From: Octopus sinensis
Lineage: Eukaryota
Direction of reading: 5' to 3'
Assembly (NCBI RefSeq): GCF_006345805.1
Contig: NC_042999.1
Coordinates: forward strand, 132,432,001-132,496,000
Length of the DNA stretch: 64,000 nucleotides
Shown here: piece after piece, positions 3,481 through 63,705 of the stretch
How the letters are laid out: each line of letters starts with the position of its first letter
Position numbering within the stretch: the first letter of the stretch is position 1
Program-made: the position numbers and the translations under genes
Notes under the pieces: generated by a model
Database searches by the model: none
Seen by the model: the letters and a program-made list of their open reading frames with translations, nothing else
What the model was told of the DNA's origin: nothing

Positions 3481-4968
3481 ATGATATCCAGAACATTTTT
3501 TTTCCTTTTCTTAATTATATTAACAGTGAAAAGTGAAAATAATACGTTTGGAAATGTTATGAAAACGATTGTGTCGGAATACAGTAATTCGACGTCAACT
3601 GACAACAACTATGCTGCGTGGTTTTTTGAACAAATGATAAAGCTTCTAAACTGCGGTCCTTTACCGAAATTAAACAACAGTCAAATACAATATACTTTGA
3701 AATGGGAAGAGGAAAAAATACACCTGCAACAAAAGTGCAACCGCTATTATGAAGCAAGCGTAGAGAATACAGCCGATATTATTTGTTGGAATGGTAAATG
3801 GATGTATGAAGATAGAAAATGTAAGTTAATAACTTGCCCGATTTTTCCTAAACCTGCAAACAGTTTCATGATAAATGTTGCATACACATATAACTCTGTT
3901 ATTCGCTTTTCCTGTGTTTCTGATTATATTTTGCGAGGAAACAATACAATACGTTGTCAAGAAAATAAACAGTGGTCGTCTCTACCACCAATCTGTGAAA
4001 TTGTTAAATGTCTCCCACCGAACCCACCCAAACATGGCAAGGTAAACAATACAAATGAAGTTGAAATTAACGAAACAATTCACTACAGTTGCTTAAAACC
4101 TTATAATCTGAAAGGTGAATCTGTATTAACTTGTCTTCAAGGCGGTAGCTGGAGCTTTCCGGCACCTGTCTGCATTTTGAAATGTGTTGTACCTGAAATT
4201 GCTGGCAGAGTTGTGACTATTTCTGAAGGTACAATTTTAAAACCAAGAACCTTAATCAATCAAGGAGAGAAAGTGTTATATTCGTGCAAACGATCCTTCA
4301 TTCCTGTCGCATTTGGAGTCGTTCAATGCTTGTCAGGTAAATGGTATCCAGACATACTTTGCAGAAAAACGTGCAAAATTGAGAAACTACATGGATTAAA
4401 TTATATTTTGTCACATAATTTTTCAGTTATTGAATATAGCTGTTCAGCAGGAGAAACATTGTTGGGAGATTCTAAAAGGACCTGTTTAGAAAATGGAACG
4501 TGGAGTGGAAAACTTCCACAGTGTGTAAAGTACTGTCAATTGTTACCCGTGTTTGGCATATACAGCTACCGAAATTCAGACACTTTGCAATATCTTCCAT
4601 TTGGCAGCACAGTCTTAGAAAATACGAATATTATGTATTCATGTGAACTTCCTTATGTGAAGAGCTCAAGTAAGAATGTGATGTGTCGTAATGGCATTTT
4701 GACCCCCAAACCACGCTGTTCATTTAGAGATATTCAGTTGATAAATTCTGAAGTCAGTTTTACTCATTTATCGTCAAACTATTATGTTTGTAAAACAAAA
4801 TACACTTGCGAATTTTTTGGTTACAGACGGAAATCATGCAACTATAATAAGTGTCAATATTATGCAAACGCTCGATGTGTCCAACTAGGCTTTAACAATG
4901 CAACATCAGAAATGTATATTAGTGCAAAGACTACTAATTGTTGTGCTATGCAATGTTATGATGATTAA
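3481..4968 (+). CDS. Intronless secreted Sushi/CCP (SCR) repeat protein, 495 aa, copy 1
   Basis: Hydrophobic N-terminus (MISRTFFFLFLIILTVKS). Six C..C..C..W..C modules at aa ~58-114, 119-172, 177-231, 235-294, 298-348 and 352-413 (the sixth lacks the Trp). 8-Cys C-terminal module at aa 437-492. Nine N-x-S/T sequons. No transmembrane segment. Uninterrupted 1.49-kb ORF in AT-rich DNA. Confidence 0.9.
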   Translation: MISRTFFFLFLIILTVKSENNTFGNVMKTIVSEYSNSTSTDNNYAAWFFEQMIKLLNCGPLPKLNNSQIQYTLKWEEEKIHLQQKCNRYYEASVENTADIICWNGKWMYEDRKCKLITCPIFPKPANSFMINVAYTYNSVIRFSCVSDYILRGNNTIRCQENKQWSSLPPICEIVKCLPPNPPKHGKVNNTNEVEINETIHYSCLKPYNLKGESVLTCLQGGSWSFPAPVCILKCVVPEIAGRVVTISEGTILKPRTLINQGEKVLYSCKRSFIPVAFGVVQCLSGKWYPDILCRKTCKIEKLHGLNYILSHNFSVIEYSCSAGETLLGDSKRTCLENGTWSGKLPQCVKYCQLLPVFGIYSYRNSDTLQYLPFGSTVLENTNIMYSCELPYVKSSSKNVMCRNGILTPKPRCSFRDIQLINSEVSFTHLSSNYYVCKTKYTCEFFGYRRKSCNYNKCQYYANARCVQLGFNNATSEMYISAKTTNCCAMQCYDD

Positions 4969-9976: not shown

Positions 9977-11461
9977 ATGATATCCAGAACATTTTTTTTC
10001 CTTTTCTTAATTATATTAACAGTGAAAAGTGAAAATAATACGTTTGGAAATGTTATGAAAACGATTGTGTCGGAATACAGTAATTCGACGTCAACTGACA
10101 ACAACTATGCTGCGTGGTTTTTTGAACAAATGATAAAGCTTCTAAACTGCGGTCCTTTACCGAAATTAAACAACAGTCAAATACAATATACTTTGAAATG
10201 GGAAGAGGAAAAAATACACCTGCAACAAAGGTGCAACCGCTATTATGAAGCAAGCGTAGAGAATACAGCCGATATTATTTGTTGGAATGGTAAATGGATG
10301 TATGAAGATAGAAAATGTAAGTTAATAACTTGCCCGATTTTTCCTAAACCTGCAAACAGTTTCATGATAAATGTTGCATACACATATAACTCTGTTATTC
10401 GCTTTTCCTGTGTTTCTGATTATATTTTGCGAGGAAACAATACAATACGTTGTCAAGAAAATAAACAGTGGTCGTCTCTACCACCAATCTGTGAAATTGT
10501 TAAATGTCTCCCACCGCATCCACCCAAACATGGCAAGGTAAACAATACAAATGAAGTTGAAATTAACGAAACAATTCACTACAGTTGCTTAAAACCTTAT
10601 AATCTGAAAGGTGAATCTGTATTAACTTGTCTTCAAGGCGGTAGCTGGAGCTTTCCGGCACCTGTCTGCATTTTGAAATGTGTTGTACCTGAAATTGCTG
10701 GCAGAGTTGTGACTATTTCTGAAGGTACAATTTTAAAACCAAGAACCTTAATCAACCAAGGAGAGAAAGTGTTATATTCGTGCAAACGATCCTTCATTCC
10801 TGTCGCATTTGGTGTCGTTCAATGCTTGTTAGGTAAATGGTATCCAGACATACTTTGCAGAAAAACGTGCAAAATTGAGAAACTACATGGATTAAATTAT
10901 ATTTTGTCACATAATTTTTCAGTTATTGAATATAGCTGTTCAGCAGGAGAAACATTGTTGGGAGATTCTAAAAGGACCTGTTTAGAAAATGGAACGTGGA
11001 GTGGAAAACTTCCACAGTGTGTAAAGTACTGTCAATTGTTACCCGTGTTTGGCATATACAGCTACCGAAATTCAGACACTTTGCAATATCTTCCATTTGG
11101 CAGCACAGTCTTAGAAAATACGAATATTATGTATTCATGTGAACTTCCTTATGTGAAGAGCTCAAGTAAGAATGTGATGTGTCGTAATGGCATTTTGACC
11201 CCCAAACCACGCTGTTCATTTAGAGATATTCAGTTGATAAATTCTGAAGTCAGTTTTACTCATTTATCGTCAAACTATTATGTTTGTAAAACAAAATACA
11301 CTTGCGAATTTTTTGGTTACAGACGGAAATCATGCAACTATAATAAGTGTCAATATTATGCAAACGCTCGATGTGTCCAACTAGGCTTTAACAATGCAAC
11401 ATCAGAAATGTATATTAGTGCAAATACTACTAATTGTTGTGCTATGCAATGTTATGATTAA
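9977..11461 (+). CDS. Intronless secreted Sushi/CCP repeat protein, 494 aa, copy 2
   Basis: Differs from copy 1 by K85R, N181H, S285L, K483N and loss of the terminal Asp; synonymous changes seen at N260 and G279. Confidence 0.9.
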   Translation: MISRTFFFLFLIILTVKSENNTFGNVMKTIVSEYSNSTSTDNNYAAWFFEQMIKLLNCGPLPKLNNSQIQYTLKWEEEKIHLQQRCNRYYEASVENTADIICWNGKWMYEDRKCKLITCPIFPKPANSFMINVAYTYNSVIRFSCVSDYILRGNNTIRCQENKQWSSLPPICEIVKCLPPHPPKHGKVNNTNEVEINETIHYSCLKPYNLKGESVLTCLQGGSWSFPAPVCILKCVVPEIAGRVVTISEGTILKPRTLINQGEKVLYSCKRSFIPVAFGVVQCLLGKWYPDILCRKTCKIEKLHGLNYILSHNFSVIEYSCSAGETLLGDSKRTCLENGTWSGKLPQCVKYCQLLPVFGIYSYRNSDTLQYLPFGSTVLENTNIMYSCELPYVKSSSKNVMCRNGILTPKPRCSFRDIQLINSEVSFTHLSSNYYVCKTKYTCEFFGYRRKSCNYNKCQYYANARCVQLGFNNATSEMYISANTTNCCAMQCYD

Positions 11462-21355: not shown

Positions 21356-21443
21356 GTCCTTCCAAGTCACCACACAGTGGGACTGAACCCAGGACCATGT
21401 GTTTGGAATGTAGTTTGTTACCACACAGCCACACCTGCCCCTA

Positions 21444-36889: not shown

Positions 36890-39800
36890 TCCAACAAACG
36901 CCAATCTCCTTAGCAACTCGTTTGAAATTGAGTTCCCTACACTGCCTTCACCACAACTTCAGGAAAGAAGGTAGGAAAAAGAGATCTGACACAAACAAAT
37001 TCAAACGTAAACATGAATGTCAATACCACCACCAACACCAACGACAACAACGATATCGTCGCAAAGCCTTACACCATGACCTCCACGAAAGAGAGTACAC
37101 CATGGCCTCCACGAAAGAGAGTACACCACCACTATAACTTCACCTTCAAATGCTACAACTGACACTTCTGCTACCACCACAACCACCACTACCACCAACA
37201 CCACCACCACCTAGTTATCTTGGGCAAAGAGTGACGAAGGTGGAAATAAAAATGTGCCTCCAGAGGTAGAGACGCAATTATTATTATCTGCCATCTGCTT
37301 CGAAATGGAGGAAGCTAGCATTTTAGAAATTGCTGTCCTTGAACAGCAAAACTGGGTGGATAAAACGCTGGAGATACTTTTACAAATCGATCAAGAATCT
37401 ATTAATAAATTACCCATAAGTATTCAATTAGCAGAAGGATACAAGTTGTATGTAGTGGTAGAGGGCAGGCGGCCACGGTGTTATTTGTGCAACAGCGAGA
37501 CACCTGTGAAAAATGATTGTCTAGCGGCCGCAAAAAACAAGAACAGCAACAACAACAACAACAACCACTACCAAAACCTGGAAAAAACCCTTGCTACCCA
37601 CACCACCTTCAACACAAAAGACAATAAAAAAATCACCATCATCACCAACAATCGACAGCAAAACAACCCCTGGAAAACACCAAGAAGTGAAGATACAGGA
37701 AAAACAAAAGATTCAAAAAGTGACTCCCCTCCCCTATATTACATACACCTCACACAAACAACCAACAACCAACACCGACGAAAACAACAACGCAGCCACT
37801 TACAGAAACACACACAGACGCTTATAACATGCCCTTACCCGCCTTCCGATTCCTCAGAACTTTCGTCGGAAGACGAAAGTAGTGAGGAATGGCAAATGGC
37901 CAGAAAAGGAAGGAGGAAGAGGAGCAACAAAAGCAAACACCAACAAAGCAGGGAGATACACAACTCCCGAAGACATTTCGAACTCTAACACAAACAACAC
38001 CAACGCCAACACCACGAAAACGATGCTCGCAACCATAAACACTAACAACACAGAGTTGATGAAATATATCAACTCAAAAACAAACATTACAGAAAATGAC
38101 ATTAAAACGAGCAACCACCCATAATCAACATGGATCATGACCACGATTGGGGCCCACTTGAAAACAAGGGTGCCTCTTAAATGACATAAAGTCACACGAT
38201 TTGGAAATCATAGCCATAAGTGAGACCAGACTCCATGAACCACGGGCCCTAAAGTCCATGTTTGGCGGACAGTTTAACATTTATTTTTCTCCCTGTTTGC
38301 CGAAGATGGGTGGTAGTGGCACTGCGGTACTTTTTCGAAAGAGTCTGGATCTAGAAGTAAAGACAATATTCGTAGACCCGGAAGGTAGACTGGTTGTCTT
38401 GGATGTCGACGGCAGTGATGGGTGCGCTATTCGACTTCTAGCAGTCTATGCACCTCCTTTAACAGGTCGGCCGGATTTCTTTCGACGTAAAGAAGTATCC
38501 CTAGGAGCGTCTCGTCCTGTACTTTTAGTGGGGTATTGGAATGCTACCTTGGACACGCAGACTACGTGGGCAGAGACAGAAATAGAGCCGCGCGAGAGGC
38601 CCGGGTGGCGGAGGCACAACGGGGCAACAAATCCACCATTCGGTCTCTGGTAGATGAACAGGGGTACGAATTGCTCGAGTCCGGCAAGATGTGCGAGGCG
38701 TTTCAGTAGCATTTTGTCCGACTGTGCGGGATGAGTGGCGAGCGAGAACGCAGAGTGGACTTCAGTGCCTACCTGCACAGTCTGCCACGACTCTCGGCAA
38801 GAGAGGCAGAGTGCTGCGAAAGTGCCATCACGGCGGCGGAAGTGCGGGACGCGATGGCAGGATGCTCGAGGAACAAATGGCCGGGTTTGGATGGTCTGCC
38901 CTATGAGCTTTACAGTTGTATGCCAGACTTGTTTGGAGACGTCTTGGCAGCAGTGTATTGCAACTGGCAGCAAAATGGGAGCATCCCCGGTTTTGTTAGC
39001 TGAGGAGTCCTAACGATGCTGAAGAAAGATTCAAACAAGGGGCACGTAATAGATAACTTTAGGTTCATCACTCTGCTCAATGCAGACTTGAAAATTTTAG
39101 CCAAGGTGTTAGCCAAGAGATTGGCGCTTGTCATCGAGAAACTTGTCGACAAGGCGCAAGCGTGCGCCGTGCCAGGCTGGAGCATCCATGACAACCTCCA
39201 TCTGATGCGCTACATCGTAGACAGGGTAGTTAAGGAACATGGTCCTGATCAATTTGGATCAACTCAAAGCTTTCGATAGGGTAGAGCATCGATACTTGGA
39301 GGCTGTCCTCATAGCAGCCGGTTTCGGTCCTGTCTCCCACGGCTGGATGGCTGCCTTGTACAGAGGCATCCGTTCGGTAATTCGCATGAATGGACATTTA
39401 TCGAGACCTTTCGACATTGCACGTTCGGCCCGTCAGGGATGCCCACTCTTGTCGTTTCTGTACGTATTGATTCTCGAGCCACTACTGCAGAAGCTGGCGA
39501 TATTGAGGGGCATCCTGCGAGAACTGGGGTGCAGGACGAGCGTGTCCGCATACGCGGACGATGTCACCTTCATAGTGTCTAGCCACGAGCACATCGAGCT
39601 GGTCGGCGAGACACTGAAAGACTACGAAGCGGTGACGGGGGAAAAAATCAACCGGGAAAAATCAGTGGGCCTATGCCGTCCGGCAGCGTCACAGTAGTGG
39701 GATGCTGGACCGACGGGTCGGTCAAGTTGCTCGGAGTCTGTTTCGGTCTGGACCTCCAAACGAAGAACTAGGACGATATAACGAGTAGCGTGGTTACTCT

Positions 39801-41274
39801 CTCCCGGCAATGGGCCGAGAGGAAGCTGTCCCTAAAAGGTCGGGCGGAGGTGGCGAAGGCGTACATTGCGTCCGTCATCTACTACTGCCTGACCGTCGTA
39901 CCTTGTTCGTATCTGGACCGTATCCTCTTCCGCTTCTTGTGGAAAGGAAGCGTTCCGATGGTCAGGCGATCCATTTGCTGCCAACACCCGATGAAAGGAG
40001 AGCTAGGCATGCCGTGGTTGATGATGCCCAGACGCACAGAGACTGCGATATTCCCGGCTCCACATAGACGACAGTGGACAAGTGTGGTTGCCGTCTGTGC
40101 GACGCGCTTTCCCGCAGCTCGTCTCCAGGACCTAGCTGCAGTCGTGGATCAAGAAGAGGCTGAGAAAGGGTGAATGTCGCGTTGCTCTGGAGCAACTCTG
40201 CCGCCCGGGTTGACGTTGAGCGACTGCATCTCAACCAAAGCATTCTATAGGACATCAGTGGAGGGGAGGTACGACGACGTTCTCGGGGCGAACTCGACCT
40301 GCCTGTTCAAGGAATACTCGACCTGCCTGTTCAAGACGATTTTCTGGCCGGGACCTATGGACAACTTTCAGAGATCCCTGGCCCGGCAGTGCTATCGAGA
40401 AGCGCTACCCGTTCGGGATAAGCTAATCAGGCACAGCTCGAGAAACACTGGGCCGACCTGCCCGAGATGCGGGCAGAGCGACGAAACCGTTCTGCACGTA
40501 CTCGTGCAGTGTCCAACCATTTCTAAACTGTGGGCTTATGTCGATTGACTGCTGTCACGTGTGGGACGAGTCGGTTTATCAGCCGAGTCTATCGTCAATA
40601 TTGTCGATCCTCCTTCCTCCAAACGAGAAGGAAGAGCTATTTTCATCGTACATGTGGCTATGGCGTAAGAATGTGTCTGTTGGACGCGTCTAAAAGGATT
40701 AGAGACAAACACTTTCCTCTCTGGTCAATATCTCATCAACTTTTTCAAGTATCACTTGAAAAGGAAGGTGAGAGTAGAAAGGCAAGTTTTGTGTAGCGAA
40801 TGTTTCAACAAAAGATGGGTGAATGTAGCAAGGATGGCTCGTGTGAATGACAGAGCCACATTGAGCATGATCCTATGTACCGGAAAAAAACAGTTACATC
40901 CTTGTAAATAAATATGTTACTATGTTACATCCTTGTAAATAAATATGTTACTATGTTACAACCTTGTAAATAAATATGTTACTATGTTACATCCTTGTAA
41001 ATAAATATGTTACTATGTGACATTATTGCCCGAGGTAACCGTGATCTTTTGTAGGTTTTTCTTTCCACGGATAAACCTCACCAACTTTTAGGAACTTTTT
41101 GTATTACTTCGATTTTTTTTGTATATCCCAAACGATTTCGATCCCTTTTGATCGTTGTCCCTAATTTTATTTTTTTTTCTATATATTTTGTTTTGTTCCC
41201 CCCCCCTCGTAAAGAAAAACTCTACATTGTATCTGTCCCCTCTATGTTTAGCTCTGTGTGGCCAATAAAGAAAG

Positions 41275-48656: not shown

Positions 48657-49761
48657 AACACACAAACACACACACACACATGTATGTATGTATGTATGTA
48701 TGTATGTATGTATGTATGTATGTATGTATGTATGTATGTATGTATATATATATATGTATATATATAACAGACAGCTACATAAATGTATACATATATGCAT
48801 ATATAGATTATTTTAATGTGTCATTATGATTATTCTATTATGCAGCCACATGAAAGTACTATGTCTTATGGAACTGTGTCTCACCCCGTTAATAGCAAAT
48901 ACAAAATTCATCTTATGAATTACACTCCACTAATCTTGGAATTGCCAATGCAAATCCAAATACTTTCTCGTGAAAACGTACTCTCCTTGAGGCATGATAA
49001 AAAGAAATTAGTACCAAAGATCCCCGTAATACTTCAGATCCCCAGCGAACACAATTTTAAATTATTTAGTAATTTCTTCCAATTTACTGATGTGTACATC
49101 TGACTGAAAAGCGGGTGAATGGAATTATGATGATGTATAATCCTTTTTACTGTAGATATGATAAACATAAATCGGGCTCTACACAACACTTCTAACGCTA
49201 AAGTATATTGAATAACTATGTTTTTGCACTACAAAACAAACACAAACATCATGCTACAGCTTCACTAGAGCTGAGCACCCTCACTTTACACAAATATTAC
49301 ATAAACATGTAATGAAGAGGTCATTGGAAAATAATTCAGAGCCAACAAAACAGTCTACTTAGAAGCAAACATCGAGAGACTGGAATATGTAATAAACTAT
49401 TGTGTAAAGGATCGTGGGGATGGTCAGAACAATGCGAAGTAAATGCAAGGCAAATCACAAAAATTAATGCTTCATAGTGATTATTTCATTAGAATATACT
49501 ATGTTTGATGGAAAGCATAAAATAATACAATACAAGCAGAAGCAGAAACAACGAAGGATAATTTTTTTAAAGATCAAAAAACGTTTAAATTACACGATTG
49601 TTTCCAACTATTTATACAATGATGTCAGAAAGCTGCAAATATGGGAAACGGCAATGAATTCCATCACGTTGTTTGAAATGGATTTAATGCAAAGGAATAC
49701 ATTTTATTGCAAGCAAGAACATCTATGTAAATTTAAAATACAATTAGAAAATACTTTGATA

Positions 49762-49902
49762 TTAATCATCAGAACATTCCAAAATACAACAATCAATAAT
49801 TCTTGCATCAATATATAATTCTGATGTTGCATTGTTAAAGCCTACATTGACACAATGAAACGAGCCTTCACTTTTACAATCTATCAAAGTACAAGATTGC
49901 TG
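49762..49902 (-). CDS. 3' end (46 aa plus stop) of a diverged third paralog of the Sushi gene, truncated by the assembly gap
   Basis: Translates QQSCTLIDCKSEGSFHCVNVGFNNATSELYIDARIIDCCILECSDD*, an ungapped 21/46 match to RKSCNYNKCQYYANARCVQLGFNNATSEMYISAKTTNCCAMQCYDD* with all 6 Cys aligned. Confidence 0.85.
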   Translation of the reverse strand, partial: QQSCTLIDCKSEGSFHCVNVGFNNATSELYIDARIIDCCILECSDD

Positions 49903-50002
49903 NNNNNNNNNNNNNNNNNNNNNNNNNNNNNNNNNNNNNNNNNNNNNNNNNNNNNNNNNNNNNNNNNNNNNNNNNNNNNNNNNNNNNNNNNNNNNNNNNN
50001 NN
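49903..50002. other. Assembly gap (100 N)
   Basis: Run of exactly 100 N, probably a placeholder of unknown true size. Confidence 0.98.
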
Positions 50003-51420
50003 TAGATATGCTCAATCCCTTTCCTGAAACAATAAACAAAAACACCCTACTAGTACCCTTCGATGTAGTCAACCTCTATTCCAATATCTTCCACAACCTA
50101 GGAGTAGAGGCGATTCAGTTCTGGCTAGAGAATTACCCACATCGCATGAAAAAAGAATTCGTGATAGAAGGGCTAAAATTTATCTTGGAGAATAACTATT
50201 TCGTCATCAGTGACAACTTCTATTGACACAAAAAAAGCGGGGACTGCGATGGGTACGAGAATGGCCCCCTCCTTTGCTAACCTAGTCATGGGATATCTAG
50301 AAATTATTTTTATCGTAAGGCGCTAGAAAAATACGGCAACCCATTCTACCTCTACATAGAAAATAACTGGAAGAGACACCTGGATGACTGTTTATTTCTT
50401 TGGCATGAAAGTATAGAGAGACTTAGAGAAATTCAAGCACTTATAAATGGACTTAATGTAAACATTCAATTCACGATGGAATATGGCCATCAACAACTTC
50501 TCTTCCTCGACATCCTCATTAAGAGAAAGATATATATACTATATACTCACGGACTCCAATCAATATCTACCGTTCAACTCATGCCACCCAGACACACCAG
50601 AATGAATATTTTCTTCAATCTAGCAAAAAATGATCGCTACTGTAGTTTCTAATGCAAGCACCAGGGACACACGACTCATCACCAGGAACTACTCACCTTC
50701 ACTATTTAACATATACTTTCAACGTGTCCTACAACTCAACATCCACGAACCCAGACATCCCAAATTAAAGAAGGATTTACAACCAAAACCCCTACCATAC
50801 ATCTCCACACACAACACTCTTGACAACGAAGCCTTCGACACCATCCTTCAAAACATTCTCCTGCTGAAAATGAATAACAGAATAAACTTAATCCTCCAAA
50901 CACACACCATCATAAAAAGCAAGAGACAGTCCGAATCCATGAAAAGTCTTCCTAACACAAGCCCGAATACGCTCAACAACAACACTAAAGCCGTCAGTAA
51001 AAAATGCAGAAGACCCAACTGTCAATTTAATTGAGGGATCAGAGTTCTCCTTCAAAGAAGGACAACGTGTCACAGTGAAAAGCAGCTTCACATGTGCTTC
51101 GGAGAGCCTGATATGCGCACGAACCTGCTCTGAGTGTCAAGAGCAATACTTAGTCCAAACGAAAAGCGGTCGACGTCAAAGGATGGATCTATACAGATCG
51201 AAGATCAAAATTCCGAAAAACAGAAAAATAGCATTCAGTCAACACATCAACATTTGCGCCAATAACAAAAATTCAAGCTTCAGAATGTTCCCCCTCTATC
51301 AATACAGGGGCGATACAACCTGTAGCCAACGAATTAGTAGAGTCGTTCTTTATCACAAAATACAAACCCCTTTTGAACGCATCTACAACAAATGACATAT
51401 CCACCACGACCTTAAAATAG
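50003..51420 (+). mobile_element. Penelope-like element remnant (RT plus GIY-YIG endonuclease), frameshifted
   Basis: 'LVPFDVVNLYSNI', 'FILENNYF', 'GTAMGTRMAPSFANLVMGYLE', 'WKRHLDDCLFLW', 'NIQFTME..FLD'; 'SLICARTCSECQEQYLVQT..R' is a degenerate GIY-YIG. Confidence 0.85.
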
Positions 51421-52180
51421 CACACACGCAAAAATTAAAAATGATACGTTCAAAAGAAATACCCAAGAATTCATTAAAAACAGTCCCAATCACTACTATA
51501 ATCGAGAACGAACAACTTTTAGGTCACTTGACCTTTTAACATCCTACTACTATCATATCTCTCATGCATCCTTTTATTATTCTTTCTCTTCTTCTCCTTC
51601 TCCCCCTCCTCCTCCTCCTTCTCTTCTTCTTCTTCTTCTTCTTCTTCTTCCCCCCCCTTCCTTACTTTATAACTACAGCTGTTTAGAATAACACCCGCAC
51701 AAATATATAAACAATACATTCAAAAGAGATATCCCAAGAATTCAATCACTACTACAATCCACAACAAGTCACTTCCAGGGCACTTGAACATTTAACAACC
51801 TACTACTATCATACCACTCCCACATTCTTCTTCTTCTTCTTCTTCTTCTTCTTCTTTTCTTCTTCTTCTTCTTCTTCTTCTTCTTCTTCTTCTTCCCTAC
51901 CAAGAATTCACAACGACCTCGAACCCGCAAGAGTAAACAAGAGGGACAGAGACAGGCAGAAACAAGGAAAATGCCACTTGTAATTGAATACTATGCGAGA
52001 TATTCTTTTAAAATACTTTTCATCTAATTTTCCCAAAATTTAATTGTTTTCCATACTTAGAGTTGAAAAAGTTTCAATGACTGAAACCAGTACTAAAATG
52101 TTTTTATGATAAAATTATTTTAGTATTTTCTACCTTGACGTTTTTCGTTATACACATCAACTCGTATGTTCCTTTTCAAA

Positions 52181-52214
<34 letters not shown>

Positions 52215-52603
52215 CACACACACATATGTGTGTGTGTAAATATTGATATTTCTAAATCTCTTTAAAGGAGGCTACGGAAGCGGTACTGGGTATTAATAGT
52301 TATCTCCAAGCTAACATGGCAGTCCAGAAAAATTGGACCAGGCTGCCGTTGATTAGCTCAAAGAGGTCATCGCTTCTAGCTTGCTATGTGACACACAAAC
52401 CTGTGTCCATTATAACCTTCGAACAGGGGAGGTCAGCAGCTTCCCCTTGCTACATACATACATACATACATACATACTTACATACATACATACACACATA
52501 CATACATACTCCTTCTTCCCTTCTTTCCTGAGCGTCCAATAATACTTTATTTGTTCCACATCCTTGCTTTGTTGTCTTTTTGTTTTCTTGTTTGGATTAA
52601 CTT

Positions 52604-52661
<58 letters not shown>

Positions 52662-52868
52662 CCGTAGACGTGGCTGTGAGGTAAGAAGCTTGCTTTCAAA
52701 ACCCATGGGTTTGGATTCAGACCCACTGCATTTGACCCTGCGCAGGTGTCTTCTACTATAGCTTCGGGCGGATCAAAGTCCTGTAAGTGGGTATGTATCT
52801 CCATATGTGTGCATTCATACGTGTTTTGTGAGTGCGTCTGTTTGTGCATATTTGTGTGCATGTGCAGG

Positions 52869-52869
<1 letters not shown>

Positions 52870-52916
<47 letters not shown>

Positions 52917-53135
52917 AGTGTCTGTGTCTGTGTAGATGTGAACGTTCATTTATGTATGCCTGACAGTTCAGAATCAATGTCACCAGTAGTGACGATGTAA
53001 TAACGAAACCTAGTTTTCTTCAAATTTCCCACGTTCACAAAATTCCACAAAATTCCTAGAAATGAAATGATTTCTAGGAAAAAATTACGTATCAAAACCT
53101 CCTTCTAAGAAAAATAAACGTTAGTCGTAACGGGG
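52870..53135. repeat. Direct copy of the left arm and loop of the 55.2-55.85 kb palindrome
   Basis: 'tgtctgtgtctgtgtagatgtgaacgttc...ttctaagaaaaataaacgttagtcgtaacggg' occurs at both sites. Confidence 0.9.
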
Positions 53136-53451
53136 AAGAGGTCTTCAAACACACACACACAGGCGTGCCCATGCGCGCTTATATATACACATATAGAAAT
53201 ATACGTAGATAGTTTAACAGACTATAAAAAATAGATAGATTGATATTCATGTATACATAGATATACGCTGGCGTGTCTGTGTGTCAGGAAGTTTGCTTCC
53301 TAACCACATGATACCGGGTTCAGTTCCACTGCGTGACACCCTAGCATGTGGCTGCCACAATGGCATCGCGCCGACTAAAACTTTGTGATTGTATTTGGAA
53401 TATGGAAATTGTAAAAAAGCCCGTCGTGTGTGTGTATATATATATATATAA

Positions 53452-53494
<43 letters not shown>

Positions 53495-53519
53495 TATATG
53501 TATATGTATATATATATCA

Positions 53520-53830
53520 AAGAGCCATGGAAAGGTCAATGCTTGGAATCTCGTTGAGAGAGCATATCAATAGCGAGGTCATCAGAGAGAAGTCCGGCGT
53601 GAGGGATGTCATCGCAGAATATACACGCAGCAAGTTTAGTTGGACCCGCGCAGTTGTCGAGTGGTACCCGTGCGAGCGGAAAGGACCACTCGGAAGGCCT
53701 CCACGACGATTTCAAGAGGACGATTGGGATCACGTGGATGAGAAGGGCGCGATCCAGAGAGGAGTGGACAGCGTGCTGTGACCAGCGTTGTCAAATGGAC
53801 GCCCGACGGACTGGTCGGTCAAGGTGATGA
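53520..53830 (+). mobile_element. RTE LINE 3' fragment
   Basis: 'MERSMLGISLR..SEVIREKSGVRDVI..KGPLGRPPRR'. Confidence 0.8.
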
Positions 53831-53832
53831 AG

Positions 53833-53866
<34 letters not shown>

Positions 53867-54104
53867 TTCACTTGTTTCAGTCATTAGACTCTGATCATGT
53901 TGCGGCACCACTTTGAATTTTTACTACTTACTATTTGCTAAGCCTGACAGTTTCCTATCGATGTCTTTTGACGAACTGCTTTGTTACAGAGACGCAAACG
54001 CACCAACACCTGCTGTCAGTTGGTGAAGACAGACAGACATAAAGACACACACATAAATATACATACATACATACATACATACATACATACATACATACAT
54101 ACAT

Positions 54105-54157
<53 letters not shown>

Positions 54158-55171
54158 ACAAATCGGTATGTGGTCTGAGTGCTCCAAGTGATAAGCTACT
54201 AGGATCCAAGTTCACAACGGGGACTGGAATTGTGGTATATATATATACTACGGGCTTTTTTCATATTCAAGATTCCAAATACAATCACAAGGCTTGGTTG
54301 GCACGATGCCATTGTAGAATACACATGGTATGATGTCATGCGGTGGAACTGAACTCGGTACCATGTGTTTAGGAAGCAAACTTATTACCACACAGCCACT
54401 CCAGCGCATCTCTACGTATATACGAATATATATGTGTCTATCTATTTTTATTCGTCTGTTAAACTATCTACTTATATTTCTATACGAGCAAAACGTCCTC
54501 GTCCAATGGACGGTGCTGAGTTGTCAAACATTTAAACTAAATTTTCTCAAAACAACTTGTCCGACTGTCCCATAGGCCTCCCCTTTGAGAAACACTGATT
54601 TAACCTAAATTTGAGACACCACGAAAAGAAGAAATAAAGATCGACGTATTTTCTATTCCAAAGAAAAACGATTTTATTCACACAAATATGCAACCGAAGA
54701 GTTTAAAGTACCAGTAATGATAAGGCTGTTGACTTGGAGAACACAAACATGGTTTAAACAGTAAGTTTGGCAGGAAAGAAACGTGCCATTAAGCAGTACA
54801 AAAACAACAAAAATGGAAGGTGCAGTTATGTACAGGTTGACAGAAGAAAAGCAGGACAAAAACGATGCATGCAAATGGGTTAGCTGGAGGTAAATCTAGA
54901 TGGAAAAGCATGATGATTTCTTTGCCTCAAACTGCACGTGCATTTTTCTCGCGTAGGCATAGTATCGATCGCAACAGCTGATGTATTTGCGCGTACAAAT
55001 GCACGTTCCCGCAGCTTTATCGATCGCATTCTCACCTGGAATCGATTTTTGCAATTTTTTCAAGACTTATATACGCCTTGATACCGTCGGTATCTACATA
55101 TCAAATTTGAGCGCAATCGGATGGAGGATACCCGAGATCCTAGAAGACAAACACACAGACAGAACGGATTT

Positions 55172-55203
<32 letters not shown>

Positions 55204-55204
55204 G

Positions 55205-55830
<626 letters not shown>

Positions 55831-56010
55831 ACACATATATATGTATATTAATATATATATATATATGTATATATATATACACATACATACATATATACAC
55901 ACACAAACACACACACACACACGCACACACAGATATATATATATATGTGCAAGGGTATTTGGTAAGCAGTGTCGATTTTTACAACTTTGCTAATAATAAT
56001 AATAATAGAT

Positions 56011-56508
56011 AAATGCCCTGATGCAGTACCAGGCAGTGGCTCTCATGGCTTCTGATCTTAACTGATTGGAAGTTTTATCATGTACATTCTTTTGTCTTGG
56101 TATAAAAGATGGGCCACGGCAAATATTCTGCTCAATACCACAGATTTGCTTGTCAGTTGTTTGAGCATGTCTCTTGGTGGATGATGATATGTGCATCTCA
56201 GATCACGAGCAGAAGTAATGGGAGTGCATCATAGCCGTGTGTTGAGAGGGATTCTTTGAGGTTTGAATAATTAACCTCAGGGACCTTTTGAGCGGGATGG
56301 GTTACTCGACCAGAAGAAAATTGTAACTGGGCCCCACCTGCAAGGTCATGTGCTGTTTATCTTGATATGAGATCACCATGTCGCGCACATATGGTTGTGA
56401 TGCATGTGCCTAGTGTACCCTTATCAGACGTATAGTCATGATGGGTATACTGGGTTTCGTACATTCTACCCCGGTGTCATCTTGATGACATGCCTTGCTC
56501 TCTCACTC
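56011..56508. mobile_element. Second copy (internally deleted) of the (AAT)n-flanked repeat
   Basis: Colinear with 45637-46192, with two internal deletions. Confidence 0.8.
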
Positions 56509-56785
56509 AATAATAATAATATTTTATAAGCTTAAAGTATGTAAGCGATCACCGTGTAATGACTGAAGAAAATTGTCTACTATTGGGGCATATAAGTCCT
56601 CGACGGAAAAAAGTAGGCTTGCTGTATGCATGGAACTCTAACCTACAACTCCTTGTTTTCGCGAAATGAAGAATAATATTATTATTGTAGTAATTAAGCC
56701 TGACAATGCCTAGAATAGTGCCAACAGCAACAGCTGCCAGATGAGATTTTGTCTTTTTATAATCAGTAAATATAAACACATATAT

Positions 56786-57529
56786 AAGCACATAAGTAAC
56801 AAGGATGTCAAGGTAATAACGCATTACGGCCGTTTCAGGCGGCTCCATTTAATCGAACAATGCAAGCATTACATCAATTTGAAATACATAGCCATCTTCG
56901 GATGGAAAACTATAGGTTTTCAATACACAAGATACTCCATTATAATTTTTAGCAAATATTTCACCAGAACAACCAGATGAAAGAATTCCATGCTGCTACA
57001 ATTGTAGCAGAATAAACTTAGAGAGAAATAAATATCCCGACTACAATTTTGGAGTGGGAGAAAAAGATAACAGTGGGGTTCATGAGATGGTAATTTAGCT
57101 AGAATTTTTAGCTATACCCTTATCACCATCAAAAGATCTAATGCAGCTAGTATACTGTCTCTACTAAGAATTCAAGCCACTAGTAGTTGACAGCTAAGTT
57201 GTAGCTATTGGTCATAAACTAAATATTGGCAGATATTCTCTCAAGCTTTAATTCTCTATGGCTATCAACTTTCTTTACCAGATAAGAAAACAAATCTCGG
57301 AAGAAGTCATTTAGATAGTGGTAAATGCCCAGAAAAATGTAGGGTAGGGGTGATATAAATTCTTTTATTACCAGTTAAAGGGGCCTACAATAGAAAATAA
57401 AGAGCGCTACAATGAGATGTAAATGGTCATTAAGGGTACAGAGGGAAAATTGCATTGTTCGAGTAAATGGAGTCGCTTGAAACGGGCGTAATTCATCAAT
57501 ACTTCGACATCCTTGTTACTTATTTGCTT
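56786..57529. mobile_element. Old MITE with ~80-bp diverged TIRs
   Basis: 56786-56865 reverse-complements 57450-57529 ('ttgcattgttcga.taaatggag..gc.tgaaacgg..gtaat..gacatccttgttactta'). Confidence 0.7.
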
Positions 57530-57630
57530 GTTATTCACCTTATTTCGAGCTGTGCGGATAATACCAGACTGACTTGGTGCCTCAACTTAAGTAGCTAATT
57601 CAAGTGAATCTTAATTACTTTTCATATACA

Positions 57631-57685
<55 letters not shown>

Positions 57686-57686
<1 letters not shown>

Positions 57687-57870
57687 TGTCCACTCGACAA
57701 CTGCGCGGTCCACCGATTATCGGTGAGCCGGGCGACGTGTGCAGCCCATCTAAACTTGGTGCGTGTATAATCTGCGATGACATCCCTCACGGACTTCTCT
57801 CTGATGACCTCGCTACTGATTGCTCTCTCAACGAGATTCCAAGCATAGGACCTTTCCATGGCTATTTGAT
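57686..57870 (-). mobile_element. RTE LINE 3' fragment (same family as 53520)
   Basis: 'SEVIREKSVRDVIADYTRTKFRWAAHVARLTDNRW'. Confidence 0.8.
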
Positions 57871-57881
57871 TACTATATAGA

Positions 57882-57919
<38 letters not shown>

Positions 57920-58147
57920 ATATATATATATATATTATATATATATATATATAATATATATCTATAGATATATATATATACATACATCCATACACACACA
58001 CCACAGAGACACATACACACACACACACAAACACACACACATATATAAATGTATATATATATGTATATATATATAGTATATATGTATATATATATGTATA
58101 TATTATATATTATAAAAAATGTTATATATATGTATATATATAATATA

Positions 58148-58178
<31 letters not shown>

Positions 58179-58413
58179 GTATATATATATATATATAATT
58201 ATATATAATATATATATATTATATATATACTAAGTAATTAGGTTTAGCAACGATTTGCCTCACCACACCCGAATTTAGAAATAGCAGTCAAAGAGTTATA
58301 GCTATTCTTTCTACTAAAAGGGAGATCTCAGTAAAGCCACAGCACTTGAAAGGCAAACACAGACAGTCAAGAGAGAAAGAAATGACGGCAATCTATCATA
58401 CAATTTGAAGTCA

Positions 58414-58504
58414 CCTACGGACGTACGTTTCGAAATTAAGTTTTAGGAAAGCATAAGAATTAGATAATTATGTCTTACCCAACTTCTTTTCTCATCAGCG
58501 TAGG
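58414..58504 (-). ncRNA. Type I hammerhead ribozyme, monomer 1 (intact)
   Basis: CCUACG-CUGAUGA-GAAA..UUUC-GAAA CGUACG UC|CGUAGG; predicted cut between 58420 and 58419. Confidence 0.88.
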
Positions 58505-58992
58505 ACACTACAATTATGAATAATTGTATATTAAATTTCGAGATACTAGAAGGCTTCATCTCAACTCAGTATCCGAGCGAGCTAAAACCGTTACCAGTAT
58601 CACCAAATTCAAAGTGTGAATGAAAGTTTGTGTCACCATCCCCTTCCCACCAGCGTGTAGCCAAGACAAGATGTTGTGGTCATTTACTGGGATGAAATAT
58701 GGTTATCAGTAATAATGTAGGGTGAAATTAATTAATTTGGAAAATCATTAATTTCACCAAGTAGATTCGGCATGTAAAAGCCTCATTCGAGGAAAGTTTA
58801 ATTAATACTAAGTAATTAAGGGTTTAGCAACGATTTGCCTCACCACACCCGAATTTAGAAATAGCAGTCAAAGAGTTATAGCTATTCTTTCTACTAAAAG
58901 GGAGATTCTCATAAAGCCACAGCACTTGAAAGGCAAACACAGACAGGCAAGAGAGAAAGAAATGACGCAATCTATCATACAATTTGAAGTCA

Positions 58993-59080
58993 CCTACGGA
59001 CGTACGTTTCGAAATTAAGTTTTAGGAAAGCATAATATTAGATAATTATTCTTACCCAACTTCTTTTCTCATCACGTAGG
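58993..59080 (-). ncRNA. Type I hammerhead ribozyme, monomer 2 (C3 missing as assembled)
   Basis: CCUACG-_UGAUGA; otherwise as monomer 1. Confidence 0.65.
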
Positions 59081-59563
59081 ACACTACATTATGAATATTG
59101 TATATTAAATTTCGAGATACTAGAGGCTTCATCTCAACTCAGTATCCGAGCGAGCTAAGACCGTTACCAGTTCACCAAATTCAAAGTGTGAAGAAAGTTT
59201 GTGTCACCATCCCCTTCCCACCAGCGTGTAGCCAAGACAAGATGTTGTGGTCATTTACTGGGATGAAATTGGTTATCAGTAATAATGTAGGGTGAAATTA
59301 ATTATTTGGAATAATCATTAATTTCACAAGTAGATTCCGGCATGTAAAAGCCTCATTCGAGGAAAGTTTAAGTAATACTAAGTAATTAAGGGCTTAGCAA
59401 CGATTTGCCTCACCACACACCGAATTTAGAAATAGCAGTCAAAGAGTTATAGCTATTCTTTCTACTAAAAGGGAGATCTCAGTAAAGCCACAGCACTTGA
59501 AGGCAAACACAGACAGGCAAGAGAGAAAGAAATGACGGCAATCTATCATACATTTTGAAGTCA

Positions 59564-59654
59564 CCTACGGACGTACGTTTCGAAATTAAGTTTTAGGAAA
59601 GCATAAGAATTAGATAATTATGTCTTACCCAACTTCTTTTCTCATCAGCGTAGG
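59564..59654 (-). ncRNA. Type I hammerhead ribozyme, monomer 3 (intact)
   Basis: Identical motif to 58414-58504. Confidence 0.88.
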
Positions 59655-60088
59655 ATCTACAATTATGAATAATTGTATATTAAATTTCGAGATACTAAAG
59701 GCATCATCTCAACTCAGTACCGAGCGAGCTAAAACCGTTACCAGTATCACCAAATTCAAAGTGTGAATGAAAGTTTGTGTCACCAACCCCTTCCCACCAG
59801 CGTGTAGCCAAGACAAGATGTTGTGGTCATTTACTGGGATGAAATATGGTTATCAGTAATAATGTAGGGTGAAATTAATTAATTTGGAATAATCATTAAT
59901 TTCACCAAGTAGATTTCGGCATGTAAAAGCCTCATTCGAGGGAAGTTTAAGTAATACTAAGTAATTAAGGGTTTAGCAACGATTTGCCTCACCACACACC
60001 GAATTTAGAAATAGCAGTCAAAGAGTTATAGCTATTCTTTCTACTAAAAGGGAGATCTCAGTAAAGCCACAGCACTTATATATTTATG

Positions 60089-60119
<31 letters not shown>

Positions 60120-60354
60120 GTTCGTGTGTGTGTGTATGTATATATATATATATATATATGCTATTTTAAATCATTAGTCGCTCGTTCAAATTTGTTTTCT
60201 CATCATTCAGTGTTAACGTGTTTTCCGCGTGATTACTGACTCCCGATTGGGTGCTGTTCTCTGATTGCCTGATCCAATCTCTGATAAGCTGTCCCTAAAA
60301 TATTTTATGACAACTTGTTCTTATTAATCATTTTTCTGTCGTTGTAAAGAATGC

Positions 60355-60730
60355 CTGGTTGAAGAATTTCGTCGGAAAGTCATGCTCAAATAAAAATTCT
60401 GTACGAAGAAGGATACATCAGTCGACAAATTGGTGAAAGATTGAAATTGGCAAACAGAACAGTTTCAAGGTCAATAAGCAACTCGAAATCTACTGGAAAA
60501 TATGTATTTGACAAGCCTACGGGTCGCCCAAAACCCACCACCAAGCGAATGGGAGATGCTGTAATTTTAGCTGCCAAAAAGCCACCCAGAAAGTCTGTGG
60601 TTAACTCGTCAAGTTTCTTGAATACATCACCCGAACACCTGATGGCTGCTTATAGGTGGATGTTATCTCTCCTGACTGCTAAAGTAGCACAAACGACTTA
60701 TGGCAAAACTCTTTGCAGTGGGTGTAAGAA
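60355..60730 (+). mobile_element. Tc1-like transposase N-terminal remnant
   Basis: 'AQIKILYEEGY..IGERLKLANRTVSRSI..TGRPKPTTKRMGDAV'. Confidence 0.7.
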
Positions 60731-60739
60731 ATGATCCTA

Positions 60740-61850: not shown

Positions 61851-61934
61851 TAAGCAAACACCTGATGCACCTACCTATTTAAAAAGAAAAATGATTCATT
61901 CACTGTTCATTTTCTGTGCATTATTCTATGTACT

Positions 61935-63150: not shown

Positions 63151-63369
63151 TTGTCAGTTTAAAATGCTATATTCTCAGATCCCCATCAAAATTGCTTACT
63201 GAATCATAACAGCTATTTTCGATTGATAAACAATATGATTTGACGAAAAAATTTAGTGCTTACCTCTTTCTCTATCATGTATACAAAAGTTTCAGTAATC
63301 AAGGAAATTATTAAATTACTATCAATCATATCTACATCTGACTGAGCAAATCAATTTGATTTTTTTATT

Positions 63370-63705
63370 TAGTGATACAGGAGCACTCCGTCGGTTACGA
63401 CGACGAGAATCCCAGCTGATACGATCAACGGAACAGCTTGCTCGTGGAATTAACGTGCAATTGACTGAGCAATCCACAGACACGAGTACCCTTAACGTAG
63501 TTCTCAGGGAGAGTCAGCGTGACACAGAGTGTGACAAGGCCGGCTCCTTGAAATACAGGTACAACTCATTTTTGCCAGCTGAGTGGACTGGAGCAATGTG
63601 AAATAAAGTGTCTTGCTCAAAGACACAACGCATCGCCGGGAATCGAACTCACGACGTTACAATCGTCAGCCGAATGCCCTAACCACTAAGCCATGCGCCT
63701 TCACT
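63370..63705 (-). mobile_element. tRNA-type SINE (another family)
   Basis: Reverse head 'gggaatcgaactcacg..ctaaccactaagcca', body 'aaataaagtgtcttgctcaa'. Confidence 0.75.

What the first reader, a model, noticed from the sequence alone, without database searches (positions are those of the whole stretch)
49762..49902. Hidden third, diverged Sushi-family paralog disappearing into the assembly gap
Seen: a minus-strand frame absent from the ORF track encodes QQSCTLIDCKSEGSFHCVNVGFNNATSELYIDARIIDCCILECSDD*. It aligns without gaps to the C-terminus of the 3481/9977 proteins (21/46 identical, all Cys kept, same DD* end, 24 identical nt over GFNNATSE) and is cut exactly at the N run. Inference: the locus is a gene cluster with an old inverted duplication plus a recent tandem one; the 100-N gap must hide more than 1.3 kb if this gene is intact, and may hide further copies.
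Basis: partly seen in the sequence, partly recalled or inferred. Interest (0 to 1): 0.75.

Follow-up and report, generated by a model that had tools for sequence, protein, structure and literature searches.

The report
Orphan Sushi-gene tail at assembly gap
The 141 bases are the real last 46 codons of a separate, unannotated member of an octopus-specific family of secreted Sushi-repeat proteins, cut off by an assembly gap; this is an ordinary gene-family and assembly matter, and the assembly cannot show whether the rest of the gene exists.

Summary
Window 49762-49902 (minus strand) is an open 46-codon frame plus stop that abuts the 100-N run. It aligns without gaps to the C-terminus of the two 494/495-aa Sushi proteins: 21/46 aa, 98/141 nt, 6/6 Cys, tblastn E=2.5e-9.

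The window is Octopus sinensis CM016861.1, about 132.43-132.50 Mb. The fragment and its 3' flank have a clear ortholog in O. bimaculoides (about 91-92% identity over about 830 nt). The fragment therefore represents an old, separate paralog lineage, which I call X. A full-length X-type paralog, P0017, sits on an unplaced O. sinensis scaffold.

In O. bimaculoides the ortholog is only a 5'-truncated relic of about 320 nt. It carries an in-frame TAG and a frameshift and lies 1 kb behind an intact family gene.

The low identity of the tail (46%) says nothing about age. The family's last ~50 codons are hypervariable (omega 1.2-2.8) even between genes that are 82-87% identical overall.

The O. sinensis contig ends exactly at the boundary between the conserved body and the hypervariable tail. 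That fits a repeat-induced assembly break. I put the chance that a gene body continues into the gap at about 0.55, that X is intact at about 0.4, and that it is a relic as in O. bimaculoides at about 0.37.

The parts
49765..49902 (-). Last 46 codons of paralog X. They encode the C-terminal three-quarters of the family's Cys-rich, non-CCP terminal module. The frame is open and is cut at its 5' end by the gap.
   Evidence: 90.8% nt identity to O. bimaculoides L003:12689-12829. Corresponds to residues 450-495 of the g1 protein, the last four predicted beta-strands.
49762..49764 (-). TAA stop codon of X, at the same position as in g1 (...DD*).
49903..50002 (.). 100-N scaffold gap of unknown true size. 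It hides whatever lies 5' of codon 450 of X.
49584..49761 (-). Proximal 3' flank of X, homologous to the 3' flank of g1/g2 (about 68%). Holds an AATAAA at 49703-49708 that is shared by X-type copies only.
49117..49583 (-). X-type-specific 3' flank segment. It is absent from g1-type flanks and present in O. bimaculoides X and in P0017.
48891..49116 (-). A 225-nt element found in the 3' flank of g1, g2, P0002, P0003, P0018, P0017 and X (78-81% identity).
3481..4968 (+). g1: intact single-exon 495-aa family gene with a signal-peptide-like N-terminus, a CCP string and the C-terminal module.
   Evidence: (Pfam Sushi E=8e-32, 4 stretches).
9977..11461 (+). g2: recent tandem copy of g1, 494 aa. One GAT codon is lost before the stop.
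   Evidence: dS 0.01.
50003..51400 (+). Degenerate retroelement-like sequence at the far side of the gap. By eye it has an RT-like ...HLDD... motif and a GIY-YIG-like C-terminal part, with many stops and frameshifts. It has no family homology.
   Evidence: Pfam finds nothing, so the retroelement label rests on inspection only.

Best explanation
The fragment is the true 3' end (last 46 codons, stop and 3' flank) of a distinct old paralog, X. X belongs to an octopod-specific family of single-exon genes. These genes encode secreted, N-glycosylated proteins built from a string of CCP/Sushi modules plus a Cys-rich C-terminal beta module.

Shown:
- X lies convergent to the recent g1/g2 tandem pair on the same contig.
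- X has its own type of tail and 3' flank, shared with the full-length gene P0017 on an unplaced scaffold.
- X has an ortholog in O. bimaculoides, so the lineage is older than that species split (about 34 My according to the O. vulgaris genome preprint).
- The tail's low identity to g1 reflects family-wide hypervariability of the last ~50 codons on a fixed Cys/sequon scaffold, not great age.

Inferred:
- In O. sinensis the contig ends exactly where the family's conserved, repeatedly homogenised body (up to ...FFGYRQ) meets the unique tail. A repeat-induced assembly break would fall there.
- The most likely content of the gap is therefore the rest of a full-length X copy (about 1.35 kb of CDS plus a TATA promoter), possibly with further family copies now stranded on unplaced scaffolds.
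- Whether that copy is intact is unknown; I estimate about 0.4.
- The 46 residues alone are an incomplete domain and cannot function on their own.
For: - Reality and family membership.
- Source and synteny: the window is GCA_006345805.1 CM016861.1. The P0002 locus is collinear with window 1-14537 over more than 10 kb. The O. bimaculoides order P0003(+), X relic(+), then P0002(-) mirrors g1/g2(+), then X(-) and the gap.
- Orthology: window 49902-49071 matches L003:12689-13493. The tail is 128/141 identical and the flank 606/655. This equals the species-level flank divergence of g1 versus P0002 (JC 0.085-0.087).
- An X-type full-length gene exists. The P0017 tail and flank match window 49854-48868 at 78-83% and share the X-specific flank segment and the AATAAA.
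- Hypervariable tail: omega is 1.2-2.8 in the last 50 codons against 0.35-0.9 in the body for intact pairs.
- Differences between the two species' X tails avoid positions conserved in g1/P0002/P0003. Only 1 of 11 changed codons falls on the 18 conserved positions; one search gives P(0)=0.0016, and adding P(1) by hand (not a tool result) gives P(<=1) about 0.02. All six Cys and GFNNATSE are kept.
- The O. bimaculoides truncation looks lineage-specific. The g1-like 3' flank of P0003 stops at +660, at the junction with an inverted-repeat element and the relic. The related O. sinensis P0018 keeps at least 1.7 kb of that flank.
- P0002 and P0003 share ancestry younger than the species split up to that junction: 3' flank JC 0.047 against 0.081-0.087.
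- The contig break coincides with the conserved/hypervariable boundary.
Against: - The only assembled ortholog is a 5'-truncated relic covering family residues 386-495. It has a 12-nt deletion that creates TAG and a +4 frameshift, and no CCP-coding sequence lies between it and P0003.
- Three indels in the 180 nt upstream of the part visible in O. sinensis exceed the roughly 0.5 expected per lineage since the split, judged from the flank indel rate. This hints at an older inactivation.
- dN/dS of the tail between species (12.5 nonsynonymous, 0.5 synonymous) is not distinguishable from neutrality (P about 0.26). The O. sinensis branch is no slower than the O. bimaculoides branch.
- No annotated O. 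sinensis, O. vulgaris or O. bimaculoides protein ends with this tail.
- No unplaced-scaffold gene examined supplies a matching 3'-truncated body.
- Decayed copies are common in the family.
- The argument from the position of the contig break is an inference about assembler behaviour, not a measurement.
Confidence: 0.55

Rival explanations
1. The fragment is a stranded 3' pseudogene relic in O. sinensis too. X lost its first ~385 codons before the species split. The gap then hides only about 180 nt more of decayed X, a spacer, and probably another intact family gene about 1 kb upstream, as in O. bimaculoides behind P0003.
For: The O. bimaculoides ortholog has exactly this structure, with a TAG and a frameshift. 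It has more indel lesions in its upstream 180 nt than expected for a recent inactivation. The tail evolves at or above the neutral flank rate in both lineages. No protein with this tail is annotated anywhere. Relics and broken copies are frequent in the cluster.
Against: The visible 46 codons are open in both species and keep all Cys and the sequon. Substitutions avoid conserved positions (P about 0.02). The flank of P0003 is truncated relative to O. sinensis P0018, and the P0002-like tract runs right up to the junction, which suggests the junction formed in the O. bimaculoides lineage. A contig break 180 nt inside unique relic sequence has no obvious cause.
Confidence: 0.37
2. The fragment is an alternative 3' terminal exon of an upstream family gene, spliced in at the acceptor-like ...TTTTTGGTTACAG just 5' of it. 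That motif is seen in O. bimaculoides.
For: In O. bimaculoides the relic lies 1 kb downstream of P0003 on the same strand. The last 52 codons are open, and the sequence ahead of them resembles a splice acceptor.
Against: All family genes examined are single uninterrupted ORFs. The acceptor-like string is simply the conserved FFGYR coding sequence found in every paralog. No transcript evidence is available.
Confidence: 0.03
3. The match is a chance open frame or an assembly artefact with no biological counterpart.
For: None beyond the short length and the position at a contig end.
Against: tblastn E=2.5e-9 within the window. A collinear ortholog of about 830 nt exists in an independent assembly of another species. 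A paralogous full-length gene has the same tail and flank type.
Confidence: 0.01

Closest known systems
O. bimaculoides relic at CM046603.1 about 98,292,825-98,293,143 (L003:12511-12829), 1 kb downstream of the gene for XP_014785378.1 (P0003)
   Same: Ortholog. 128/141 nt identical in the tail, 92.5% in the 3' flank, the same stop codon, the same X-specific flank segment and AATAAA, and the same position relative to the g1/P0002 locus.
   Different: In O. bimaculoides the upstream sequence is assembled. It shows 5' truncation at about codon 385, an in-frame TAG and a frameshift. In O. sinensis that part is hidden by the gap.
O. sinensis XP_029657165.2 (P0017), on unplaced scaffold VCDQ01000550.1
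   Same: X-type tail (...GFNNATSEIYIDA...CC...C.DD*) and X-type 3' flank at 78-83% identity. It is a full-length single-exon family gene.
   Different: It is a paralog, not X itself: its divergence of about 0.2 compares with about 0.08 for the O. bimaculoides ortholog. It has a shorter loop between Cys 2 and Cys 3, and a 1-nt deletion after FFGYRQ frameshifts its tail in the assembly.
g1/g2 in this window and their relatives, annotated by NCBI as 'complement factor H-like', 'SVEP1-like' or 'P-selectin-like' in O. sinensis and O. bimaculoides, plus two Argonauta hians proteins
   Same: The same C-terminal module (six Cys of the fragment in register, the GFNNATSE sequon, the DD* end) and homologous 3' flank blocks.
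   Different: 46% aa identity in the tail. X has a different flank type and the opposite orientation. X's body is unknown.
Vertebrate CCP-string proteins: factor H, CD46, CR1/CR2 and beta2-glycoprotein I
   Same: The parent proteins fold as strings of CCP modules (Pfam Sushi E=8e-32; Foldseek E down to 1e-18). Like beta2-glycoprotein I (from my own knowledge of that protein), they end in an atypical Cys-rich terminal module.
   Different: There is no orthology: sequence identity is 15-25%. The octopus genes are single-exon and restricted to octopods in the search. No evidence links them to complement regulation; the names come from automated annotation. The fragment itself covers no CCP module.

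Membership tests
Octopod single-exon multi-CCP secreted protein family (g1/g2, P0002-P0011, P0017-P0020) | C-terminal module with the Cys pattern C-x4-C-x7-C-x20-CC-x3-C near the stop | tested here: met
   6/6 Cys in register with g1. C487, C488 and C492 (g1 numbering) are invariant in 8 family members.
Octopod single-exon multi-CCP secreted protein family (g1/g2, P0002-P0011, P0017-P0020) | GFNNATSE-type N-glycosylation sequon block in the tail | tested here: met
   A 26-nt run identical to g1, also conserved in P0003, P0017 and the O. bimaculoides relic.
Octopod single-exon multi-CCP secreted protein family (g1/g2, P0002-P0011, P0017-P0020) | Family-type 3' flank, including the conserved 225-nt element | tested here: met
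   49584-49761 and 48891-49116 match the g1/g2, P0002, P0003, P0017 and P0018 flanks.
Octopod single-exon multi-CCP secreted protein family (g1/g2, P0002-P0011, P0017-P0020) | CCP/Sushi modules, a signal peptide, an ATG and a TATA promoter upstream in one uninterrupted ORF | not testable with these tools
   Everything 5' of codon 450 lies in the N run. No family homology exists beyond the gap and no matching truncated body is found on the scaffolds examined.
Sushi/CCP domain (Pfam PF00084), for the fragment itself | A match of the encoded peptide to the Sushi profile | tested here: not met
   The 46-aa peptide gives no Sushi hit, only a sub-threshold Ig_5 hit at E=0.016. It maps to the non-CCP C-terminal module, residues 450-495. 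The parent proteins do match (E=8e-32).
5'-truncated pseudogene relic | Loss of the 5' coding part | not testable with these tools
   Hidden by the gap in O. sinensis. Met in the O. bimaculoides ortholog.
5'-truncated pseudogene relic | Disabling lesions (stops or frameshifts) in the remaining frame | tested here: not met
   The 46 visible codons are open in both species. The lesions in O. bimaculoides lie upstream of the visible part.
5'-truncated pseudogene relic | Neutral substitution pattern since the species split | tested here: inconclusive
   The tail's 9.2% nt difference compares with 7.5% in the flank. 12.5 nonsynonymous against 0.5 synonymous is not different from neutral (P about 0.26). 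However, the changes avoid conserved positions (P about 0.02), and intact family tails also show omega above 1.
Regulators of complement activation (factor H-like) | C3b binding or cofactor function, and orthology to RCA genes | not tested
   Only fold-level similarity of CCP strings and automated names. I do not file it here.

The most novel reading that the evidence does not exclude
The family may be an octopod-specific, diversifying recognition repertoire. The CCP body is kept similar between paralogs by recurrent gene conversion in each species. The last ~50 residues form a hypervariable surface (omega above 1) on a fixed disulfide and glycan scaffold. X would then be one more specificity, still functional in O. 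sinensis but invisible because homogenised bodies break the assembly, and the true family would be larger than annotated.
Probability: 0.25. Interest if true: 0.45.

Novelty: new member of a known kind. Interest (0 to 1): 0.2.

Why it matters
The practical value is for annotation and assembly quality. An unannotated paralog lineage of a lineage-specific octopus gene family sits at a contig end. Several relatives are stranded on unplaced scaffolds or are mis-modelled: P0011 is spliced wrongly, and P0017 and P0020 are frameshifted. Counts of this family in O. sinensis are therefore unreliable until the gap is closed.

The more interesting point concerns the family, not the fragment. The family has a conserved, concertedly evolving CCP body and a fast-evolving C-terminal module. 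That pattern is typical of recognition molecules and could be followed up.

Tried and rejected
- A protein search with the 46-aa peptide found nothing. This is uninformative. The index holds only 90%-cluster representatives, and it even missed P0003, which shares five 5-mers with the query.
- I considered the unplaced scaffold with P0004/P0019 (L006) as the missing piece. Rejected: its 3' flank has no copy of the fragment.
- I considered P0020 (305 aa) as a 3'-truncated X body. Rejected: its locus is a full-length P0004-type copy with a frameshift.
- I considered P0017 as X itself. Rejected: 78-83% identity is far below the 91-92% of the O. bimaculoides ortholog.
- I looked for family or O. 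bimaculoides-spacer homology beyond the gap (50003-64000). Only dispersed repeats were found.
- dN/dS and lineage-polarised substitution counts do not discriminate a pseudogene from a functional tail, because intact tails also have omega above 1.
- My first model, held, was that P0003 is X overwritten by an ectopic copy of P0002. It had to be softened after searches showed the same pattern in O. sinensis (an old 5' flank with a homogenised CDS and 3' flank, seen for g1 versus P0018). Recurrent conversion plus a deletion in O. bimaculoides fits at least as well.
- Pfam did not recognise the retroelement-like sequence after the gap.
- Literature searches found no paper on this family. There is only a passing mention of 'complement factor H-like' in O. 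vulgaris skin mucus.

Full report

Yes. The minus strand of window 49762-49902 translates to QQSCTLIDCKSEGSFHCVNVGFNNATSELYIDARIIDCCILECSDD*. The single N run of the window (49903-50002, 100 N) begins at the next base.

Aligned without gaps to the end of the 495-aa ORF 3481-4968 (g1), the fragment shares:
- 21 of 46 residues
- 98 of 141 nucleotides
- a 26-nt identical run over GFNNATSE
- all six Cys positions
- the DD* end

tblastn of g1 against the window finds the fragment at E=2.5e-9. It finds no other family-like piece anywhere, including the 14 kb beyond the gap. The far side of the gap starts inside a degenerate retroelement-like sequence on the plus strand. That label rests on inspection; Pfam does not confirm it.

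**2. Where is it and what is the family?**

The window is Octopus sinensis GCA_006345805.1, chromosome CM016861.1, at about 132,432,001-132,496,000. The fragment lies at 132,481,762-132,481,902.

g1 and g2 (9977-11461) are single uninterrupted ORFs. Each has a hydrophobic N-terminus, four Pfam Sushi matches (E=8e-32) and many NxS/T sites. An AlphaFold model shows a string of CCP-like beta modules followed by a separate C-terminal beta module at residues about 417-495 (pLDDT 67-78). Foldseek's best PDB matches are factor H constructs, beta2-glycoprotein I, CD46 and CR1/CR2.

Significant full-length homologs were found only in octopods: O. sinensis, O. bimaculoides and Argonauta hians. The next hits are generic CCP proteins at 25-33% identity.

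The fragment corresponds to residues 450-495. These are the last four strands of the C-terminal module and hold six of its eight Cys. The fragment therefore contains no CCP module and is not a complete domain.

**3. The tail is hypervariable, so '46% identical' does not mean 'old'.**

| Pair | Identity overall | Identity in last 50 alignment columns |
|---|---|---|
| g1 vs O. bimaculoides P0002 | 82% | 47% |
| P0002 vs P0003 | 87% | 67% |

Nei-Gojobori omega is 1.2-2.8 in the tail against 0.35-0.9 in the body. The Cys residues, the FFGY block and the sequon are fixed, while the loops between them turn over.

**4. Local structure.**

g1 and g2 are a recent tandem duplication: 98.7% identity over 3.8 kb, a period of about 6.4-6.5 kb, and dS 0.01.

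DNA homology between g1 and the fragment continues past the stop codon, in the same orientation and order:
- 4876-5136 with 49854-49584 (68%)
- 5149-5370 with 49116-48891 (81%)
- possibly 5617-6081 with 47258-46798 (76%); this last block may be a dispersed repeat

The fragment is therefore the end of a duplicated gene plus its flank, not an isolated motif. The whole stretch 1-49902 is one contig, so the convergent orientation relative to g1/g2 is reliable.

**5. The ortholog in O. bimaculoides.**

Window 49902-49071 matches L003:12689-13493 (CM046603.1). The tail is 128/141 identical and the 3' flank 606/655. This equals the species-level divergence measured for the flanks of g1 versus P0002 (JC 0.085-0.087). 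The P0002 locus is collinear with window 1-14537 over more than 10 kb.

The order P0003(+), X relic(+), then P0002(-) in O. bimaculoides mirrors g1/g2(+), then X(-) and the gap in O. sinensis. The lineage I call X therefore predates the split of the two species. The O. vulgaris genome preprint cites about 34 My for that split.

In O. bimaculoides the sequence upstream of the ortholog is assembled, and it shows a relic:
- Family homology covers only residues 386-495 (L003:12511-12826).
- A 6-nt deletion is present.
- A 12-nt deletion creates an in-frame TAG.
- A 4-nt insertion in an A run shifts the frame.
- Only the last 52 codons are open.
- Directly upstream lie a 383-nt inverted-repeat element (L003:12119-12501) and then the 3' flank and intact CDS of P0003, 1 kb away on the same strand.

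**6. Is the truncation shared by O. sinensis?**

The assembly cannot say, and the indirect evidence points both ways.

For a relic in both species:
- The O. bimaculoides relic has three indels in 180 nt. About 0.5 per lineage would be expected from the flank indel rate.
- The tail differs between species by 9.2%, no less than the flank (7.5%).
- 12.5 nonsynonymous against 0.5 synonymous changes is not distinguishable from neutrality (P about 0.26).
- Changes polarised with P0017 as outgroup are symmetric between lineages.
- No annotated protein ends in this tail.
- Broken copies are common.

For a full copy in O. sinensis:
- The 11 changed codons avoid the 18 positions conserved in g1/P0002/P0003; only one falls on them. 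One search gives P(0)=0.0016, and adding P(1) by hand gives P(<=1) about 0.02. All Cys and the sequon are kept in both species.
- A full-length X-type gene exists. P0017, on unplaced scaffold VCDQ01000550.1, has a tail and 3' flank that match the fragment and its flank at 78-83%. They share the X-specific flank segment and an AATAAA at +54.
- The junction in O. bimaculoides looks lineage-specific. The g1-like 3' flank of P0003 stops at +660 at the junction. O. sinensis P0018 shares derived features of the proximal 5' flank with P0003 and keeps at least 1.7 kb of g1-like 3' flank.
- The P0002-P0003 similarity is younger than the species split right up to the junction: 3' flank JC 0.047 against 0.081-0.087, with site patterns 34:12:10.
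- The O. sinensis contig stops within a few bases of the point where paralogs change from highly similar (...TTTTTTGGTTACAGACAG...) to hypervariable. In both species the CDS and 3' flank of different loci are homogenised while their 5' flanks stay old. A near-identical body upstream of X would thus be a natural cause of a contig break at exactly this place. A relic followed by unique sequence would not.

Weighing these, I put about 0.55 on 'a family gene body continues directly into the gap', about 0.4 on 'X is intact', and about 0.37 on 'relic as in O. bimaculoides'.

**7. What the gap hides.**

A 100-N run is the conventional placeholder for a gap of unknown length (my knowledge of the NCBI convention). 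Under either reading the gap should hide family sequence.
- Either it hides the about 1.35 kb body of X.
- Or it hides about 180 nt of relic, a spacer and another family gene, as behind P0003.

At least three unplaced O. sinensis scaffolds carry family genes: VCDQ01000550.1 with P0018 and P0017, VCDQ01000500.1 with P0004 and P0019, and VCDQ01000542.1 with P0020. None of the parts I could read overlaps the fragment or supplies a body truncated at codon 450.

**8. How it works.**

The 46 residues alone cannot be functional. They are three-quarters of a disulfide-bonded terminal module. If X is complete, it would be a secreted, glycosylated CCP-string protein whose variable C-terminal module probably provides binding specificity. 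This is inferred from omega above 1 on a fixed scaffold together with a concertedly evolving body.

The automated names ('complement factor H-like', 'SVEP1', 'P-selectin-like') reflect only the CCP fold. I found no functional study of the family.

**9. Verdict.**

The fragment is a new, unannotated member, or remnant of a member, of a known kind of gene family, sitting at an assembly gap. That is useful for curation but not surprising. Interest is 0.2.

The most novel reading not excluded is that the family is a diversifying octopod recognition repertoire under-counted because of assembly collapse (probability about 0.25).

Noticed in passing
L005:10001-11476 (O. sinensis CM016861.1 132,512,283-132,513,758, minus strand; about 16 kb past the window end): The NCBI model XP_036357238.1 (P0011, 390 aa) splices out a piece. 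The locus is in fact one uninterrupted 491-aa family ORF.
   Followed up: partly
L005:2638-4005; L004:5354-6123: These are further family copies that are decayed. One, upstream of P0011, is broken into at least three ORFs. The other, near O. bimaculoides P0005, is internally deleted.
   Followed up: partly
L007:11340-11478 (VCDQ01000550.1) and L009:10001-11471 (VCDQ01000542.1): P0017 and P0020 are full-length family loci whose annotated proteins are shortened by single frameshifts. In P0017 the cause is AAA to AA just after FFGYRQ. These may be PacBio homopolymer errors rather than real pseudogenes.
   Followed up: partly
last ~150 nt of all family CDS, e.g. window 4819-4968: The last ~50 codons have omega 1.2-2.8 between intact genes, against 0.35-0.9 for the body. 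Cys, FFGY and the NxT sequon are fixed. P0018 versus g1 is a mosaic: the end of the tail is nearly identical while the loop region is very different.
   Followed up: partly
window 3372-6711 vs L008:9891-14197; L002:9777-12140 vs L003:9781-12146: In both species two loci with old, dissimilar 5' flanks have CDS and 3' flanks homogenised within the species (94% in O. sinensis, 92% in O. bimaculoides). This is a signature of recurrent gene conversion.
   Followed up: partly
window about 3370-3385 and homologous sites upstream of all family genes: A conserved TATA-box-like GCGTATAAAAGG lies about 100 nt upstream of the ATG of these single-exon genes.
   Followed up: no
window 11456-11461: g2 has lost one GAT codon relative to g1. 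It ends ...QCYD* instead of ...QCYDD*.
   Followed up: yes
window 50003-51400 (+): Degenerate retroelement-like sequence (an RT-like HLDD motif, then a Cys-rich GIY-YIG-like part, suggesting a Penelope-like element) with many stops. Pfam gives no hit.
   Followed up: partly
L003:12119-12501: A 383-nt inverted-repeat (foldback) element sits exactly at the junction between the P0003 3' flank and the X relic in O. bimaculoides. It is not present in the O. sinensis window.
   Followed up: partly
window 16094-21424, 37254-40548: Other transposon-like ORFs lie between g2 and the fragment: RT-like ORFs, Helitron/PIF1-helicase-like ORFs at 18981-21424(-), and LINE-like ORFs at 38201-40548(+). The labels are by eye only.
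   Followed up: no
protein database: The O. vulgaris proteome is represented in the database (P0023, in the P0007 cluster). It has no members in the clusters of g1/g2, P0002, P0003, P0004 or P0011, which suggests its annotation missed these single-exon genes.
   Followed up: no
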